From NCBI GenBank assembly GCA_025558095.1, contig JAIVFI010000042.1, positions 124,001-188,000 on the forward strand: 64,000 nt of DNA. The letters are read 5' to 3'. The stretch comes from Hyaloraphidium curvatum SAG 235-1 (Eukaryota; Fungi; Monoblepharomycota). Shown one piece after another: positions 40,224 through 60,910 of this stretch (position 1 is the first letter of the stretch; the number at the start of each line of letters is the position of its first letter). The notes beneath the pieces are model-generated. The model made no database searches and was not told the origin of the DNA. It saw only the letters and a program-made list of their open reading frames with translations. The translations under genes and the position numbers were made by a program.

Positions 40224-41844
40224 ATGGATCCCAAGGACCTCGGCGCTCCGACCGCGACGTCGGACGCCGCGATTGCCCCATCTCCGGGGCTCGTCGCGTC
40301 TCCGCTGCTGTTCACGCCGCAGGAGTTCGCTGCCATGTTCCCGCGGCCGCCGACGTGGCCCGCCGCGATGTCGGACTCTGAAGTCTCGTTTTCGGACCCA
40401 GCTCGCGACGCGAGGGGCCCGCAGTTGAAGCCTGCGGACCTTCTTGTCGAGCTCAAACCGTTCCCAACTCTTCGGCGATTCACGGGTGTCCAGTTCTGGT
40501 TCCTGCCCTTGACGGCTCCTCAAACCTTGCGCTACATCTTCACCACGCTCGCGGTTTCCGCGTCTTTCGCCCTGGTTTGGCCGTTCGGAGCTGGTCGTTT
40601 CGAGACCCGGATGATTGTCACGGGATTCGTGCTTCAGCTGTGCTTCAACACGGTCCGCACCGTCATGTGGGGTACGTACAATAGGCGGAAAGGATGGCGC
40701 TGGACAGTGGAACAGTTTGGCGAAAATGTCGCGGAGAACAGCTACCGGGGCCTCGTGAACTGGATCCGGCTCTTTGACTGGTCGACTTCACCCAAAAACG
40801 GCAGCCCAAGCATCTTTCCGGCTTGACGGCTCACCGGGACGGCGACGCGCTTTGCCCTTGTGCGAGGCCGTCATGCACTGGCAACACCCCGCAGAAGGTG
40901 CTCAAAGGGAGAGTCACTGAGGTACTTTATCGGTGCTCCCACAGTCTAGTATCGCAGCTGGCGATTTTGTGGACGTCTCTCGTCACCCTCGGGCCCGAGA
41001 CTTGGACAGTAGGATGGTCTGCCGCGATCTTGTGTCTCGGAAGTGGGTCGCCATCGCGCCCTGCCCGTCTGTCACTCACCGCATTCCGCCGAAGTCGTTT
41101 CTGTGGTCCTAGTTACGAGCGAGATTATGGCTACCGCCCCGCAACATCCTGCGGTTTTCAATTTGACCGCGCGGTTGCGGCATCGCGGCCTCTTTTTGGC
41201 GCTCGGGCAGCTAATCGACCACTGCAGTGCTTTGCTTCGTGCGAGCGACTGCAACGACCAACAGGCGGCTTCTTTGCCGTACGTGGAGCTACTTGCCACG
41301 CTCAGCGCAACTTGGAAGGCGAGCTTCTTTCCACGCTACATACCTCGCATATTTGCTTTCTTCTTTGCCACCGTACTTACTGCGCAATCCTCAGCGCGGT
41401 GGGGCATGTTCCTGGCTCCTTTTGCTGCTTCAGCCGATGACTCTTTTTCCATTTAAGACCATCGCAAGGTGCATACCAGCGTGGATGCTCCTCTACATGC
41501 TCTACTTTCTCGTCTCGCTGAGCCAGGAGCTTTGGAACGCCGCGATCTTCAACGCCGAGGTCGAGGACATCTCGGACCTGCTGGAACACGCCCGCCGCCA
41601 GCTCCGTCAGCTCGTCTCTTTCCGCCCGTATTCCCGCGCGGCGCTCGCGGTCCGCGCCCACGAGGCCGTGCTGGACTCGTACCTGCGCGTGGGGAACAAC
41701 AGGGCGAGGGTGCTGGGCTTCGTCGTGAGCTTCGGAGCGATACGTTCGCTCTACATCACCCTGGCGACGGTCGCGTTTGCTCTGTGGGGCGTGATCCGCG
41801 GATTGGGCGTCGGCTTCACGATGGACGGTGTCTGCCCGGGATGA
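40224..41844 (+). pseudogene. 7-TM membrane protein family paralog 1, two apparent frameshifts
   Basis: Homologous to 54387-55943 and 59432-60910. Introns at about 41042-41093 and 41399-41457. Restoring the family alignment needs a 1-nt shift near 40777 and another near 41378. Confidence 0.65.
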
Positions 41845-54386: not shown

Positions 54387-55943
54387 TCACCCCGGACACA
54401 CCGTCTGTATCGTCAGCGCAACGCCGAAACCCCTCATGGCGCCCAGTACCGCGAACCCGACCGTGATCGCAGCGACGAGCACCCCCCTCGCCGTTCCGTA
54501 TCCCACTGGCTGCCCCAGCACCCTGGCCCTGCTCGCGCCGGCCGAAGCCGCGGCCAGTTCTAGCAGCCGCGCGTGGGCTTCCAGCGCCGCCGCGGCCCGC
54601 GGGTCCGGGCTGTGGAGCGCCGAGGCGGCGAGGATGCGGCGGGCGGCCGCAGCGGCGCCGAGACACAGCGTCGAGGTGTCTTCCGCGACCGAATTGAAGG
54701 CCGAGACGATGAGGATGGAGCGGATCACCATGCCCAGGACAAAGGCGGCAGTTGCGATCTGGAACGCAGCAACGCAGCGGCCCGCGGCCAGGTTCATCAC
54801 GAGCGTGATGAGGAGGATGACGCCGGAGAATAGAACGAAGCGGCGTTCCAAGGATAGGTAGACGAATCGATGCGACCAGTCGACCGAAAGGAGCCGCAAC
54901 AACTTCACGTGGAGCTCAGTGCTGGGTTTCAGCACTGCGTCGGCGCCTTCGCCCCGTAGCAGGAAGGAGCGGTAGCGGCGCAAGAAAGAGCGTAAAGAGG
55001 CCGAAAGCGCCCGATACGCAACACGCCGCACGAAGAAAGCCGACGGAAGCATGAATACTGCCCTTTCCCGGACCGAGTAGGTGAGCCCGTAGCCCACCAC
55101 CAAGTAGATGACTGCAAAGATACCGCCAACAGCACCCCAGGAAGGCCAGAACTGTGAAGCCAGCTCGATTGCCGGAGTCCAGAGGATGAAGAGCAGAATG
55201 ACCCCGCCGCAGACAGTGTCCAACCCGGCGTCCAGCAGCCTGGCGAGCGCATCGTCCCGTAGCACGGATCCTGCGCACCCAGCAGCAGGGCACGGGCACC
55301 GCACGTCGGCCTCATCGTGCTGAAGAAGCACGAACGCAGGCGGATCGGGTTGGACGCCGGCCTCGGGATTCTCGACGTCCGCTTTGCGACCGCGCTCCCG
55401 CACGTCGCTCAGCTCCCGCAGCTGCAGCCAACGCATCACTGGCGAGAGCGACAGCGTGTCGTAGGGGTTCGGCCCCCTGTTCACGATCGCCGAGACGCGG
55501 CCCCGCCTCAGGCTCGCGGCTAGCATCCCCCAGCCATAGGAGATCAAGAACTGCAGCGCCACGATGCCTGCCGCAACCAGGCCCACGGCCAGCGCCGGCT
55601 GCGGGAAACGGGACGGCGGCGCATTGGCGGCGGTCCACGCCAGCGCGGCCAGAATGGGCAGGGCGAGCAAGTGCGCCAACGGAAAGAGCACGCCGACACG
55701 CGGGAATCTCGCGCCGAATCGAAAGAGCGCGGCCATCGCCGGCAGATTCGCGGCGTCGAACGCGGCGGCGAACGCGGCGGCGGAAAGCGGGTCCGCAGCG
55801 CGTGCCTCCGCCGCGGGGTCCGCGGGCGCGTCATCCGCAGGACGGGGACCCGCACCCCGCGGCGCCTCGGGGAACAATACGAGCCATTCGGCAGGCGCGA
55901 GCGAGGTGGCCTCGGGCCCCGGCGTGGGCTCGTCGTCGTCCAT
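54387..55943 (-). CDS. 7-TM membrane protein family paralog 2 (intronless), possible GRL/7TMIC fold
   Basis: 518-aa ORF with seven hydrophobic segments, 'MRWLQLREL...HDEADVRCPCPAAGCAG', 'LWTP', and C-terminal 'ARVLGQPVGYG...AMRGFGVALTIQTVCPG'. Confidence 0.85.
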   Translation of the reverse strand: MDDDEPTPGPEATSLAPAEWLVLFPEAPRGAGPRPADDAPADPAAEARAADPLSAAAFAAAFDAANLPAMAALFRFGARFPRVGVLFPLAHLLALPILAALAWTAANAPPSRFPQPALAVGLVAAGIVALQFLISYGWGMLAASLRRGRVSAIVNRGPNPYDTLSLSPVMRWLQLRELSDVRERGRKADVENPEAGVQPDPPAFVLLQHDEADVRCPCPAAGCAGSVLRDDALARLLDAGLDTVCGGVILLFILWTPAIELASQFWPSWGAVGGIFAVIYLVVGYGLTYSVRERAVFMLPSAFFVRRVAYRALSASLRSFLRRYRSFLLRGEGADAVLKPSTELHVKLLRLLSVDWSHRFVYLSLERRFVLFSGVILLITLVMNLAAGRCVAAFQIATAAFVLGMVIRSILIVSAFNSVAEDTSTLCLGAAAAARRILAASALHSPDPRAAAALEAHARLLELAAASAGASRARVLGQPVGYGTARGVLVAAITVGFAVLGAMRGFGVALTIQTVCPG

Positions 55944-58361: not shown

Positions 58362-59306
58362 ATGGACACGAAGGACCGCCACGTGTCGGGCATGGGCGGG
58401 TGCTTGATGGGCTTTGGCATTCCGCAGGACTGCTACGAGCCGATGAAGGCGTTCCATACGCGTTTCTGGCCCCTGCTAAGTTGCTGTCTATTCGCCCTTT
58501 GGCAGTGCGCATCGATCTCGCGGCCCGTCAGAAAGCGGCTGGCCTTGGATCCAGCCTTCTTGGACGCTCTTGGCGTGCTTCCCCTGCACGACTTTGACCT
58601 CCTGACACTCCTCGTTTTAGCCAACGGCGACGTGCCGCCTCCTGCGTCGAGCGGCCGGGAATCCGTGCGGCCGCATCCCGACGACGGACCCCTCTTCACC
58701 CCCGGCGAGCCCATGGTCCGCATCTCGGGCCGTGTTCTCTTGCACAGCCCCGAAGCCCGCGCCGCCGCCGACCGCGCGCGGCAGGGCTCCTTTTCCGCGT
58801 ACCGCACCCTTCTCGCCTGCCTGCTGGAGGAACACCTCCCGTACGAGGAGCGGATGGACTGGCTCGAGGCGGAAAGGTGCGCCATGTGCATGCCTTCGTG
58901 GCTGCGCTGGTTCTACGACGACCGCTGGGACGGTCGCACGTCCCCGTTCGTGGGGGCGCCCCGGGACGTGCTCGTTCTGGACGCGGAGCTGCGGCAGCTC
59001 GCGGACGCGATCGGCATCGCCGCGGGCGGTAGCAAGCCGCGAGCGCTCCCCTTTGCGGATCCCCTCCCCGGGGCGGGGCCGGACTCGTGCGATGCCTGCG
59101 GCAAGAGCGGTGGGCTGATGCGGTGCGGAAGGTGCCTCGTGGCGCGGTACTGCTCGGCGAGGTGCCAGAAGCGGGCCTGGGGGGAGCTCGGGCACAAGGC
59201 GGGGTGCGTCAAGTCGGAGCTCGAGAGGGCGTCGTTCCTAGACCGGGCGAGCGACGATGAGGCAGGCCACGGGGAAGGTCGGGAGAAAGGTGAAGAGGAT
59301 GCGTAG
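58362..59306 (+). CDS. MYND zinc-finger protein
   Basis: 'CDACGKSGGLMRCGRCLVARYCSARCQKRAWGELGHKAGC' at the C-terminus of a 314-aa ORF. Confidence 0.85.
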   Translation: MDTKDRHVSGMGGCLMGFGIPQDCYEPMKAFHTRFWPLLSCCLFALWQCASISRPVRKRLALDPAFLDALGVLPLHDFDLLTLLVLANGDVPPPASSGRESVRPHPDDGPLFTPGEPMVRISGRVLLHSPEARAAADRARQGSFSAYRTLLACLLEEHLPYEERMDWLEAERCAMCMPSWLRWFYDDRWDGRTSPFVGAPRDVLVLDAELRQLADAIGIAAGGSKPRALPFADPLPGAGPDSCDACGKSGGLMRCGRCLVARYCSARCQKRAWGELGHKAGCVKSELERASFLDRASDDEAGHGEGREKGEEDA

Positions 59307-59431: not shown

Positions 59432-60910
59432 ATGTCTGCCGCCGACGGCTCTGCGACCGCGCTCAAATCGCTAAGCTCTGCCGAGCTTCTCGCGACTTTC
59501 CCCTTTCCCGCGCCCTCGGACAACGCAACCGGCTTCCCGCGCTCCCTCGGCTCCGGCGACGAATCCGGACTCGACAAGGGCGACGGCGACCCGGAGCCGG
59601 CTCTCTCGCCAGCAGATGTCATTAACCGGCTGGAGAAGGCGGACCTCGGCGCGCTGGCGGCCATGGTGCGCGCGTGCACCACCGCCGCGTGCAGCCGCGC
59701 CGCCCTCCTCCCCGCCGCTCTCATTGCGACCGTCCTCGAGATTGCAATCGGCGCCATGATGTTTCCGCTGGATGACGGGTCGTTCGGAACCCGGCAGATG
59801 GCCACCGCGTTGGCCTGCCTCGCCGTCCATTTTGGGTTTTCGACGGCCATCATCCTCTACGTCTATCTCGCCTCTGTGGTCTCTCCTGAGCATGCGAAAC
59901 GCTTTGCCGCCAGCCTCGCGCAGACGGTCCGGTGGCTCGAACTATGCGACTCCCCGATCCCATCCAAGCTCGTGGAGCACGTTCCCGGCGACCGCTTTTG
60001 CACCTGCCGCGCGTGCTGCTCCGGGCTCCTCCGCATGGCAGTTTGGGACCGCATCCTGCGCACGAGCATATTCCAGGGGACCGGGACCATCGCCACGATG
60101 ATATGCCTTTGGACCCCCATGGTCCGCTTCGGCCCGGCCTTCTGGTCCACCTGGTACGGCGTACTGCTCGGCACCGTGTTCCTGCTTTCCGTTGTCGTGT
60201 GGAACTTTGTCGCCTTGCTCATACGCTGGACGCGGACCAGCCCCGCGGACGTGCGCCTCCGGACCCGGATCTACCGGCGCGCTAGCGCCCTCGCCCTGCG
60301 GGACCTGCTCGCGCGAGCACGCGCCTCGCTCCTTGACGACAAGCCCGTTGGCGTCCCATTGAACCGCGAACTCTACGTCTCGCTCCATGCCGAGTACGAA
60401 TCACGCTGGCGGGCGGCGCGCAGCGTGGGCGCACTTTCATCCAACGCCTTCACCACCCTCATCACCTTCGTCTCGCCTTTTGTCCTGTTTGCCTGCGCCG
60501 TGGCCAACATCGCCGTGGGATCCTGCATCCCCTTCTGGATCGTCTGCTGGTTCCTCATCAACCTCGGGCTGCTGGTGATCGACCTTGCGCAGCTGCCCGC
60601 GGCCAACGACCAGATCGACGACGTGCTCTCCCTCTACGCGGACGCCAGGACCGCCCTCCAGGCCATGCTCGCTGAGTCCGCGCGGCTGCCTCCGAGGCCC
60701 GCCGCCCGGGAGCTGAGGGAGCACCTCGGCCTGCTGACCTCCCTCTGTTCTGCGGACAACCTGCGTGCGACCTTCGTGGGGATCGTGGTGACGTGGGGGC
60801 TGGCAAAGACGGTGCTGGTCACGGCGGTGACCGTGGCAGTGGCGCTGTGGAGCGTGCTCAGGGGGGCGGGGGTGTCCTTCACGATCGAGACGGCATGTCC
60901 AAGCTTTTGA
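59432..60910 (+). CDS. 7-TM membrane protein family paralog 3 (intronless), possible GRL/7TMIC fold
   Basis: Seven hydrophobic segments, 'VRWLEL...HVPGDRFCTCRACCSG', 'LWTP', and C-terminal 'ATFVGIVVTWG...LWSVLRGAGVSFTIETACPSF'. Confidence 0.87.
   Translation: MSAADGSATALKSLSSAELLATFPFPAPSDNATGFPRSLGSGDESGLDKGDGDPEPALSPADVINRLEKADLGALAAMVRACTTAACSRAALLPAALIATVLEIAIGAMMFPLDDGSFGTRQMATALACLAVHFGFSTAIILYVYLASVVSPEHAKRFAASLAQTVRWLELCDSPIPSKLVEHVPGDRFCTCRACCSGLLRMAVWDRILRTSIFQGTGTIATMICLWTPMVRFGPAFWSTWYGVLLGTVFLLSVVVWNFVALLIRWTRTSPADVRLRTRIYRRASALALRDLLARARASLLDDKPVGVPLNRELYVSLHAEYESRWRAARSVGALSSNAFTTLITFVSPFVLFACAVANIAVGSCIPFWIVCWFLINLGLLVIDLAQLPAANDQIDDVLSLYADARTALQAMLAESARLPPRPAARELREHLGLLTSLCSADNLRATFVGIVVTWGLAKTVLVTAVTVAVALWSVLRGAGVSFTIETACPSF

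What the first reader, a model, noticed from the sequence alone, without database searches (positions are those of the whole stretch)
59432..60910. Expanded fungal 7-TM family with insect odorant/gustatory-receptor-like (7TMIC/GRL) architecture: candidate chemosensory ion channels
Seen: three dispersed, strongly diverged paralogs within 21 kb (40224-41844, 54387-55943, 59432-60910). Each has seven hydrophobic helices and no signal peptide, very short TM1-2, TM3-4 and TM5-6 loops, and long helical TM2-3, TM4-5 and TM6-7 loops. Conservation peaks at a split last helix (A-T/R-F/V-L/V-G-x-x-V-x-x-G ... T-V-A/G-x-A-L-W/L-x-x-x-R-G-x-G-V-x-F/L-T-x-x-x-x-C-P). Established: insect OR/GR channels and their GRL/DUF3537 relatives have an N-in/C-out topology with exactly this loop asymmetry, a TM6-7 anchor helix and a Gly-containing TM7a/7b hinge; this differs from GPCRs. 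Inference: this is a lineage-specific receptor-channel repertoire in a basal fungus, evolving by birth-and-death. The GR TYxxxxxQF motif is absent, so the pore-lining helix would be a new variant.
Basis: partly seen in the sequence, partly recalled or inferred. Interest (0 to 1): 0.85.

Follow-up and report, generated by a model that had tools for sequence, protein, structure and literature searches.

The report
Odorant-receptor-fold gene family in a fungus
The gene at 59,432-60,910 is one of several hundred very diverged copies, in the early-branching fungus Hyaloraphidium curvatum, of a seven-helix membrane protein whose predicted 3-D structure matches insect smell and taste receptor channels better than any other solved structure; this would be by far the largest repertoire of that kind reported outside animals, but its function is untested.

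Summary
Window 59432-60910 (+) and 54387-55943 (-) are intact single-exon genes (492 and 518 aa, 27% identical). 40224-41844 (+) is a third copy, broken into four reading-frame pieces.

All three belong to a family with no Pfam or PDB sequence match:
- at least 128 loci seen directly in this 32-Mb genome
- 455 public 50%-identity clusters
- 17 of 19 sampled clusters are Hyaloraphidium curvatum "hypothetical proteins"

- seven hydrophobic helices
- short loops of 4-11 aa on one side and long loops of 64-81 aa on the other
- N-in/C-out by the positive-inside rule in 109 of 109 members
- a most-conserved, split last helix

The family therefore meets the published structural criteria for the 7TMIC superfamily. 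It lacks the GR TM7 motif and any sequence-level link to that superfamily. It has its own invariant His/Asp/Cys3 loop motif and a conserved extracellular Cys pair.

Channel and chemosensory function remain inference. I rate this a new, hugely expanded variant of a known kind.

The parts
59432..60910 (+). Finding gene: intact single-exon ORF, 492 aa plus stop. Member of the expanded 7-TM family.
   Evidence: ORF list. Identical to database protein P0001. Family profile score 552 bits over profile positions 1-489. AF2 model pLDDT 84.8, pTM 0.82.
59696..59764 (+). TM1 (residues 89-111)
   Evidence: Hydropathy; AF2 helix 89-108.
59798..59872 (+). TM2 (residues 123-147)
   Evidence: Hydropathy; AF2 helix 120-148.
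59969..60016 (+). Family-specific motif in the long TM2-3 loop, predicted cytosolic: L180-x2-H183-x3-D187-x2-C190-x-C192-x2-C195. Candidate metal-binding site (inference).
   Evidence: H183, C190, C192 and C195 are 100% conserved and D187 95% in 109 members. The spacer between the last two Cys is 4 aa in 86 members and 2 aa in 22.
60065..60130 (+). TM3 (residues 212-233), preceded by a helical extension from residue 193
   Evidence: Hydropathy; AF2 helix 193-225 plus 227-232.
60155..60223 (+). TM4 (residues 242-264). The helix continues to about residue 302 on the long-loop side.
   Evidence: Hydropathy; AF2 helices 241-266 and 271-302.
60452..60520 (+). TM5 (residues 341-363), the membrane end of a 50-residue helix (314-363)
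   Evidence: Hydropathy; AF2 helix 314-363.
60524..60526 (+). Invariant Cys365 in the 4-residue TM5-6 turn. Candidate disulfide partner of Cys489 (inference).
   Evidence: 100% conserved. On average 1.0 Cys in this loop, 1.0 in the C-tail and none in the other short loops. AF2 places short strands at 365-367 and 482-484.
60533..60598 (+). TM6 (residues 368-389), the membrane end of a 49-residue helix (368-416) that carries invariant N392
   Evidence: Hydropathy; AF2 helix 368-416; N392 100% conserved.
60698..60748 (+). Candidate TM7a helix (residues 423-439), followed by a non-helical linker with G450
   Evidence: AF2 helix 423-439, break at 440-454. The same split is seen in model 2: helix 448-470, break, helix 482-505. 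G450 is 97% conserved.
60794..60865 (+). TM7b (residues 455-478), the most conserved helix (R459, T467, W473, L476, R477)
   Evidence: AF2 helix 455-478; entropy 1.67 bits against about 2.9 for the other TMs.
60866..60907 (+). Short conserved C-terminal tail (G480 ... C489-P490), predicted extracellular
   Evidence: G480 99%, C489 98%, P490 82%; few K+R on this side.
54387..55943 (-). Paralog 2: intact single-exon ORF, 518 aa plus stop
   Evidence: ORF. 27% identity to the finding gene. Profile score 463 bits. AF2 model pLDDT 90.8, pTM 0.90. Annotated form P0020 is 449 aa.
40224..41844 (+). Paralog 3: the same family, in four frame pieces. It has one frameshift with no room for an intron (between about 40776 and 40799). 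Two junctions carry about 50 extra bases and have in-frame GT-AG options. Probable pseudogene or mis-assembled gene.
   Evidence: Six-frame profile hits; junction arithmetic; sequence.

Best explanation
The gene encodes a member of a very large, fast-diverging family of seven-helix membrane proteins in Hyaloraphidium curvatum (Monoblepharidomycetes). The family has the fold and topology of the 7TMIC superfamily: insect odorant and gustatory receptor channels, GRLs, DUF3537 and PHTF.

Shown here:
- The genes are real, protein-coding and under purifying selection.
- There are hundreds of them, often in tandem.
- They have 7 TMs, a predicted N-in/C-out topology and long loops on the N-terminal side.
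- TM4-6 helices are long and TM7 is split, with its membrane half the most conserved part.
- Insect OR/GR structures are the best and only full-length structural matches.

Inferred, not shown:
- As in ORs and GRs, subunits assemble, probably as tetramers, through the cytosolic extensions of TM4-6 and TM7a.
- TM7b lines a central pore.
- The variable TM1-6 bundle forms a ligand pocket, so the repertoire acts as ligand-gated channels that sample many extracellular chemicals.

Family-specific additions:
- An invariant H-x3-D-x2-C-x-C-x2/4-C motif in the TM2-3 loop, which is probably a cytosolic metal (zinc) site.
- An invariant Cys pair joining the TM5-6 turn to the C-terminal tail on the outside.
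For: Family and reality of the genes:
- Intact ORFs.
- At least 84 loci found with the single protein and 87 with the profile, all 87 at E<=1e-114. My hand-merged union of the two lists is 126 loci, and two window copies appear in neither.
- 893 first-look candidates.
- 455 clusters at E<=1e-3 among 1.84 billion representatives. 17 of 19 sampled are H. curvatum singletons.
- dN/dS is 0.25-0.37.

Architecture:
- Seven hydrophobic spans.
- Loop lengths.
- K+R within 12 residues of TM ends is 10.2 on the N-terminal/long-loop side against 3.4 on the other, in 109 of 109 members.

Fold:
- Model 1 has pLDDT 84.8 and pTM 0.82. Model 2, a 27%-identical paralog with a 109-sequence alignment, has pLDDT 90.8 and pTM 0.90.
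- Foldseek top hits with probability 0.8-1.0 are all OR/GR for both models.
- ESM Atlas shape search gave TM 0.58/0.69 and 0.59/0.67 to unnamed cnidarian and echinoderm clusters.
- The nearest named language-model clusters include DUF3537 (7 hits), 7tm_7 and Trehalose_recp.
- Conservation peaks in TM7.
Against: - There is no sequence-level similarity to any OR, GR, GRL or DUF3537. PDB profile search found 0 hits at E<=10, and Pfam gave nothing for 20 members at E<=10.
- Foldseek E-values are only 0.01-0.7 and TM-scores 0.3-0.44.
- Rmsd is 5-6 A.
- The GR TM7 motif is absent.
- The TM3-4 loop is very short and the TM2-3 loop long. By my recollection this is unlike insect ORs.
- No tetramer model, expression data or electrophysiology is available.
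- The AF2 alignments contain paralogs only.
- By my own knowledge, not tested here, H. curvatum has no swimming stage. Chemotaxis is therefore not an obvious use.
Confidence: 0.6

Rival explanations
1. The family truly has the 7TMIC fold but does not act as an environmental chemoreceptor. It could be a constitutive or internally gated channel, a scaffold, or an endomembrane protein, as proposed for some distant 7TMICs such as PHTF. The expansion would then be driven by something else, for example conflict with viruses or parasites, or self/non-self recognition.
For: The fold evidence is the same as for the main explanation. The long TM2-3 loop recalls the PHTF-like Class-B description (10.1101/2023.08.30.555482). 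The invariant cytosolic His/Cys motif suggests an intracellular partner or metal. The function of most non-insect 7TMICs is unknown (PMC9998090).
Against: Hundreds of paralogs at a median 27% identity have variable TM1-6 and a conserved TM7. dN/dS of about 0.3 is, by my recollection, in the range reported for ligand-receptor repertoires. A housekeeping channel would not need hundreds of variants.
Confidence: 0.2
2. The resemblance to OR/GR channels is convergent or a generic helical-bundle match. This would be an unrelated, lineage-specific 7-TM family of unknown mechanism, such as a transporter, enzyme or receptor.
Against: For two models, every OR/GR structure listed ranks in the top 19 of 48,161 chains, most of them in the top 8. 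These hits cover about 71-94% of the target chain, while unrelated hits cover only 80-220 residues. Topology, loop asymmetry, helix lengths and the TM7 split all agree independently.
Confidence: 0.13
3. It is a G-protein-coupled receptor family, with the classical 7-TM N-out topology.
For: It has seven TM helices. Fungal and chytrid genomes do carry expanded GPCR families (my own knowledge).
Against: Predicted N-in in 109 of 109 members. An 88-residue hydrophilic N-terminus with no signal-like segment. No GPCR among the top 50 structural matches of either model. In Foldseek, GPCR rows have probability of about 0.1 or less. No Pfam 7tm family hit.
Confidence: 0.02
4. The ORFs are non-functional, either spurious long ORFs of a GC-rich genome or a decaying or selfish repeat family.
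For: The genome is 60-72% G+C and full of long spurious ORFs. One window copy is broken. There is no confirmed RNA evidence.
Against: dN/dS is 0.25-0.37 at dS 0.24-1.2. Residues are invariant across 109 members that share only 27% identity. The AF2 models are confident. Most loci are full-length open frames.
Confidence: 0.03

Closest known systems
Insect odorant receptors, Orco and gustatory receptors (7TMIC; PDB 7LIC, 8V3D, 8V02, 8Z9A, 8VC1, 8JM9, 6C70)
   Different: There is no detectable sequence similarity and no TYhhhhhQF motif. The TM3-4 loop is only about 8 aa and the TM2-3 loop is 64-81 aa with an invariant H/D/C3 motif. There is an invariant Cys pair between the TM5-6 turn and the C-tail. 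The host is a fungus without neurons. Channel activity is untested.
GRL / DUF3537 'Class-A' 7TMICs of unicellular eukaryotes and plants, including the chytrid SpunGRL1 (PMC7746228)
   Same: Length is similar (350-500 aa), as are the 7 TMs, the intracellular N-terminus and intracellular loops longer than extracellular ones, which are the criteria of that paper. DUF3537 clusters are among the nearest named clusters by protein-language-model features. Both occur in an early-diverging fungus.
   Different: PF12056 does not match any member or the genome, although that genome search had no working positive control. Known non-animal GRLs are single genes or small families: 1 in Spizellomyces, 6 in Thecamonas and Vitrella, 4-12 in plants (PMC7746228). 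Here there are hundreds.
PHTF-like 'Class-B' 7TMICs (10.1101/2023.08.30.555482)
   Same: The core 7TMIC fold with a lengthened first intracellular loop (TM2-3). That screen reported 7TMICs in Chytridiomycota and Blastocladiomycota.
   Different: Class assignment is open.
GPCRs and other 7-TM folds (PAQR, microbial rhodopsins)
   Same: Seven transmembrane helices.
   Different: GPCRs and rhodopsins have the opposite predicted topology. None of these folds appears among the top 50 structural matches. They lack long cytosolic helical extensions and a split TM7.

Membership tests
7TMIC superfamily (structural definition of PMC9998090 and 10.1101/2023.08.30.555482) | Seven transmembrane helices | tested here: met
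   Seven hydrophobic spans in the gene and in the family mean. They match the helices of both AF2 models. DeepTMHMM itself was not available.
7TMIC superfamily | Intracellular N-terminus and extracellular C-terminus | tested here: met
   Positive-inside rule: K+R is 10.2 against 3.4 near TM ends, in 109 of 109 members. The N-terminus is long and hydrophilic, with no signal-like segment. This is a prediction only, with no experimental topology.
7TMIC superfamily | Intracellular loops longer than extracellular loops | tested here: met
   Median IL1/IL2/IL3 are 81/77/67 aa. EL1/EL2/EL3 are 11/8/4 aa and the C-tail is 14 aa.
7TMIC superfamily | Long TM4, TM5 and TM6 projecting below the bundle (anchor domain) | tested here: inconclusive
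   Helix lengths fit: 241-302, 314-363 and 368-416 in model 1, and 262-330, 344-388 and 393-441 in model 2. These are far longer than the roughly 22-residue hydrophobic spans. The 3-D packing could not be inspected because no coordinates were available.
7TMIC superfamily | TM7 split into TM7a (cytosolic) and TM7b (membrane) | tested here: met
   Model 1 has helix 423-439, a break at 440-454 with G450, then helix 455-478. Model 2 has helix 448-470, a break, then helix 482-505.
7TMIC superfamily | Tetramer with a central pore lined by TM7b; ligand-gated cation conductance | not testable with these tools
   No multimer prediction tool was available, and this needs experiment.
GR/GRL/DUF3537 sequence families (Pfam PF08395 7tm_7, PF06151, PF02949 7tm_6, PF12056) | Profile-HMM match above the family threshold | tested here: not met
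   No Pfam hit for the two window proteins at E<=1. None of these families matched any of 20 members at E<=10. PF12056 was not found in the genome, but controls were also silent.
GR/GRL sequence families | TM7 motif TYhhhhhQF | tested here: not met
   The TM7 consensus is R-T-x-x-V-T-x-x-T-V-x-V-G-L-W-S-x-L-R-G-x-G, with no Tyr or Gln-Phe at conserved positions. Published distant members also keep only 1-3 of the 4 positions (PMC7746228).
GPCR (rhodopsin-like and fungal classes) | N-out/C-in topology and a GPCR fold | tested here: not met
   Predicted N-in. No GPCR in the top 50 of either exhaustive structure search.

The most novel reading that the evidence does not exclude
Hyaloraphidium curvatum, a fungus that by my recollection is non-motile and planktonic, carries roughly 400 genes for OR/GR-fold (7TMIC) ligand-gated channels. 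This would be an independent, non-animal, non-neuronal 'olfactory-type' receptor repertoire. It has its own cytosolic His/Cys3 metal module and an extracellular disulfide. Its size rivals or exceeds insect OR+GR repertoires and is one to two orders of magnitude above any 7TMIC family reported outside animals.
Probability: 0.35. Interest if true: 0.9.

Novelty: new variant of a known kind. Interest (0 to 1): 0.78.

Why it matters
The 7TMIC superfamily (insect ORs and GRs and their cryptic relatives) is thought to be ancient. Outside animals it is known only as single genes or small families of unknown function (PMC7746228, PMC9998090). Large, fast-evolving repertoires have so far been an animal feature tied to chemosensation.

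A fungus with hundreds of such genes would show that massive diversification of this channel fold arose independently in a microbe. It would also offer a compact (32 Mb), culturable organism in which to ask what non-animal 7TMICs sense and whether they are channels. The family's sequence depth (hundreds of paralogs at about 27% identity) is well suited to mapping a ligand pocket and pore by covariation and site-wise selection.

The invariant His/Asp/Cys3 loop and the Cys pair are features I did not find in the 7TMIC papers read here, and they are directly testable.

Tried and rejected
- **Pfam.** The two window proteins (E<=1) and 20 members (E<=10) gave nothing relevant.
- **PDB profile search.** At E<=10 it gave 0 hits.
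- **PF12056 in the own genome.** No hit, but the control genomes were silent too, so this is uninformative.
- **The search for homologous proteins.** The single protein and the 20-sequence profile returned only 3-4 family members because of the word index. This did not help to find outgroups.
- **Weak tail of the representative search.** About 46 proteins lie between E 1e-10 and 1e-3. They were not listed, so possible relatives in other fungi could not be examined.
- **RNA evidence.** One run, guessed to be RNA, holds 79% of the gene's words. Nothing was laid. Those places were not sent to any search tool afterwards, and expression stays untested.
- **BFVD viral fold search.** Only weak giant-virus rows appeared (Edafosvirus, probability 0.92, TM 0.3).
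- **Tmp39/TMEM39.** It ranked high by language-model features, but there is no Pfam PF10271 match and no solved structure. Not pursued.
- **GPCR, transporter and spurious-ORF readings.** Rejected; see the rival explanations.
- **Spliced or joined model of the third copy.** It was not built or searched. The copy was analysed exon by exon and by coordinate arithmetic only.
Full report
**What is at the coordinates**

The window is 60-72% G+C. It corresponds to G000:C42:124001-188000 of a 31.9-Mb, 55-contig assembly. The finding gene is an uninterrupted ORF at 59432-60910 (+), 492 aa from the annotated ATG. An upstream in-frame TTG/ATG would add 23 aa. It is identical to database protein P0001.

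A second copy at 54387-55943 (-) is an uninterrupted 518-aa ORF. Its public annotation, P0020, starts at an internal Met and is 449 aa. The two proteins align over 367 residues at 27% identity, E 6e-17.

The pieces cover profile positions 8-169, 169-248, 253-346 and 357-489.

- The first junction lies between about 40776 and 40799, where both profile alignments abut. There is no room for an intron, so it is a frameshift or an assembly error.
- The other two junctions each carry about 50 extra bases. Both have in-frame GT-AG options: 41043-41094, and 41373-41457 or 41399-41468.

The copy was analysed exon by exon. It is probably a pseudogene. Since most family members are single-exon, introns here would be unusual.

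Neighbouring genes are ordinary: ankyrin protein, amine oxidase, P-type ATPase, TauD dioxygenase and a zf-MYND protein.

**Organism and family size**

All named relatives are "hypothetical protein DFJ74DRAFT_..." of Hyaloraphidium curvatum. The window's own proteins sit on the 457,035-bp contig of that NCBI assembly. The genome is therefore H. curvatum, which by my own knowledge belongs to the Monoblepharidomycetes.

- A search of the genome with the protein gave 91 matches, which I count as 84 loci, out of 691 first-look candidates.
- A 109-sequence profile gave 893 candidates. All 87 scored were at E<=1e-114 except one split gene.
- Merging the two lists by hand gives 126 loci. Neither list contains the other two window copies, so the lists are far from complete. 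At least 128 loci are therefore directly seen.
- Contig C42 alone has at least 6 copies in 457 kb.
- A profile search of 1.84 billion representatives (one per 50%-identity cluster) found 455 proteins at E<=1e-3 and 284 at E<=1e-30.
- Of 19 sampled representatives not encoded in the window, 17 are H. curvatum singletons.

The family therefore has several hundred members in this one genome.

The remaining two sampled representatives come from a Logan assembly (SRR26194948, locus L031, 52.7% G+C) and a JGI metagenome contig (L032, 58.8% G+C). Each carries one member that is about 29% identical to H. curvatum proteins. These contigs show only patchy (72-82%) or no DNA similarity to this genome. 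The family thus exists in at least two other, unidentified organisms.

Tandem arrays are common. Examples are three genes at C41:363908-370221, and pairs on C39, C29, C9, C14, C19 and C32. Two other first-stage notes on this genome describe the same family in other windows. They are unchecked and add no independent evidence.

**The genes are under selection**

The median pairwise identity among 109 full-length members is 27%. The closest pairs have dN/dS of 0.25-0.37 at dS 0.24-1.2 by the Nei-Gojobori method. These are evolving protein-coding genes, not spurious ORFs of a GC-rich genome.

**Architecture and topology**

Hydropathy of the gene and of the family mean gives seven spans. They coincide with the helices of two AlphaFold2 models.

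| Element | Median length (aa) |
|---|---|
| TM1-2 loop | 11 |
| TM2-3 loop | 81 |
| TM3-4 loop | 8 |
| TM4-5 loop | 77 |
| TM5-6 loop | 4 |
| TM6-7 loop | 67 |
| C-tail | 14 |

- Lys+Arg within 12 residues of the helix ends average 10.2 on the side of the N-terminus and long loops. They average 3.4 on the other side. All 109 members show the same sign.
- The N-terminal 88 residues are hydrophilic, with no signal-like segment.
- The short-loop side carries exactly one invariant Cys in the TM5-6 turn (C365) and one in the C-tail (C489, 98%). It has none elsewhere.
- Both models place short strands at these two positions. A disulfide between them would fit an extracellular location. This is inference, because no coordinates were available to measure the distance.
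- The long TM2-3 loop carries an invariant L-x2-H-x3-D-x2-C-x-C-x2/4-C motif. An odd number of cysteines plus a histidine on the predicted cytosolic side suggests a metal site (inference).
- TM7 is by far the most conserved helix, at 1.67 bits against 2.8-3.1.
- By my own knowledge, variable N-terminal helices with a conserved TM7 is the pattern seen in insect OR/GR repertoires. It is also reported for 7TMICs in general (10.1101/2023.08.30.555482).

**Fold**

- Model 1 is the finding gene with 20 paralogs: pLDDT 84.8, pTM 0.82.
- Model 2 is the 27%-identical paralog with 109 sequences: pLDDT 90.8, pTM 0.90.
- No templates were used for either model.
- In both, TM4, TM5 and TM6 are parts of 45-70-residue helices that extend far beyond the hydrophobic spans.
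- In both, the last helix is split: 423-439 then 455-478 in model 1, and 448-470 then 482-505 in model 2.

|---|---|---|---|
| MhOR5 (7LIC) | 12.1 | 333 | 5.3 |
| AgamOR28 | 12.0 | 346 | not recorded |
| AaegOR10 | 11.4 | 344 | not recorded |
| ApisOR5 | 11.3 | not recorded | not recorded |
| BmGr9 | 11.0 | 343 | not recorded |
| Orco | 10.6 | 335 | not recorded |
| Gr43a | 10.1 | not recorded | not recorded |

- These seven hits take ranks 1-7 for model 1. All later rows align only 80-220 residues of helical bundles.
- No GPCR, PAQR, rhodopsin or transporter appears in either top 50.
- Foldseek is weaker, with best E 0.011 and 0.028 and TM 0.3-0.44. Its top rows with probability 0.8-1.0 are again only OR/GR structures. 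The published screen also notes that most true 7TMIC hits have poor Foldseek E-values (10.1101/2023.08.30.555482).
- The ESM Atlas shape search gave TM 0.58/0.69 and 0.59/0.67 to unnamed clusters of about 400 aa from Cnidaria and Echinodermata. It gave 0.47/0.69 to a Nucleocytoviricota cluster, and less than 0.3 for everything else.
- Among named clusters, the language-model neighbours include DUF3537 (7 hits, 0.93), 7tm_7 and Trehalose_recp, but also Tmp39. These are leads only.

**Comparison with the known superfamily**

The published criteria for a 7TMIC are:
- seven TMs
- an intracellular N-terminus
- intracellular loops longer than extracellular ones
- long TM4-6 forming the anchor domain
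- a TM7a/7b split

The 3-D packing of the anchor domain could not be inspected, so that feature is recorded as inconclusive.

What is not met is any sequence-family definition. There is no Pfam 7tm_6, 7tm_7, Trehalose_recp or DUF3537 match. There is no PDB sequence hit at E<=10 and no GR TM7 motif. This is also true of several accepted distant 7TMICs, such as PHTF, GrlHz and the trypanosome proteins (PMC9998090).

The differences from insect receptors rest partly on my own recollection of OR loop lengths. They are a very short TM3-4 loop, a long TM2-3 loop with the His/Asp/Cys3 motif, and the conserved Cys pair. The longer TM2-3 loop is reminiscent of the PHTF-like Class B (10.1101/2023.08.30.555482). 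Class assignment could not be tested.

7TMICs in chytrids are already published, as one GRL gene in each of two Spizellomyces species (PMC7746228). The 2023 screen mentions Chytridiomycota and Blastocladiomycota. Hyaloraphidium is not mentioned in that preprint or its held supplement. I found no paper linking Hyaloraphidium to this family.

**Mechanism**

Shown: a real, selected, hugely expanded family with OR/GR-like topology and predicted fold.

Inferred by analogy with solved OR/GR channels:
- assembly through the cytosolic TM4-6/TM7a extensions
- a pore lined by the conserved TM7b
- ligand recognition by the variable TM1-6 bundle
- hence a repertoire of ligand-gated channels

I put about 0.8 on the 7TMIC-fold assignment. 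I put about 0.6 on the whole statement including receptor-channel function.

The main rivals are:
- the same fold with another role (0.2)
- a convergent or generic helical match (0.13)

GPCR and non-functional-ORF readings are disfavoured.

**Limits**

- No multimer prediction, no coordinates and no DeepTMHMM were available.
- There was no access to bona fide GRL/DUF3537 sequences for profile-profile comparison.
Those places were not sent to any search tool afterwards, and expression is untested. One run, guessed to be RNA, holds 79% of the gene's sampled words.

**Verdict**

The structural interpretation is supported. The function remains a hypothesis. This is a new and extreme variant of a known superfamily: several hundred copies, its own motifs, and a fungal host. 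It is worth experimental follow-up.

Noticed in passing
window 40224-41844 (+): The third family copy is split over four frame pieces. It has one frameshift with no room for an intron (about 40776-40799) and two junctions with about 50 extra bases and GT-AG options. The region's G+C (0.606) is lower than that of the intact copies (0.67-0.68). It is probably a pseudogene.
   Followed up: partly
window 54387-55943 (-): The public gene model of this paralog (P0020, 449 aa) starts at an internal Met. The open frame and the family profile support a 518-aa protein with the conserved N-terminal 'AEW..FP' segment, so the annotation is probably N-terminally truncated.
   Followed up: partly
L031:9761-11721 (Logan SRR26194948, 52.7% G+C) and L032:3-1373 (JGI metagenome 3300043314, 58.8% G+C): Each contig carries one member of the family, about 29% identical to H. 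curvatum members. They come from organisms with a different G+C content. The L031 copy is split over two frames at profile position 366. The source organisms are unidentified.
   Followed up: partly
ESM Atlas and BFVD fold searches with the two models (no window coordinates): A Nucleocytoviricota protein cluster (TM 0.47/0.69) and Edafosvirus and Catovirus uncharacterised proteins (Foldseek probability 0.92 and 0.41) weakly resemble the model. Giant viruses may therefore encode proteins of a similar 7-TM fold.
   Followed up: no
window 58362-59306 (+): The gene directly upstream of the finding encodes a 314-aa protein with a C-terminal MYND zinc finger (PF01753, E 6e-9).
   Followed up: no
   Followed up: no
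P0012, P0035, P0070, P0129 (710-788 aa public models): Some annotated family members are 200-300 aa longer than the 7-TM core. They may be fused gene models or may carry extra domains.
   Followed up: no
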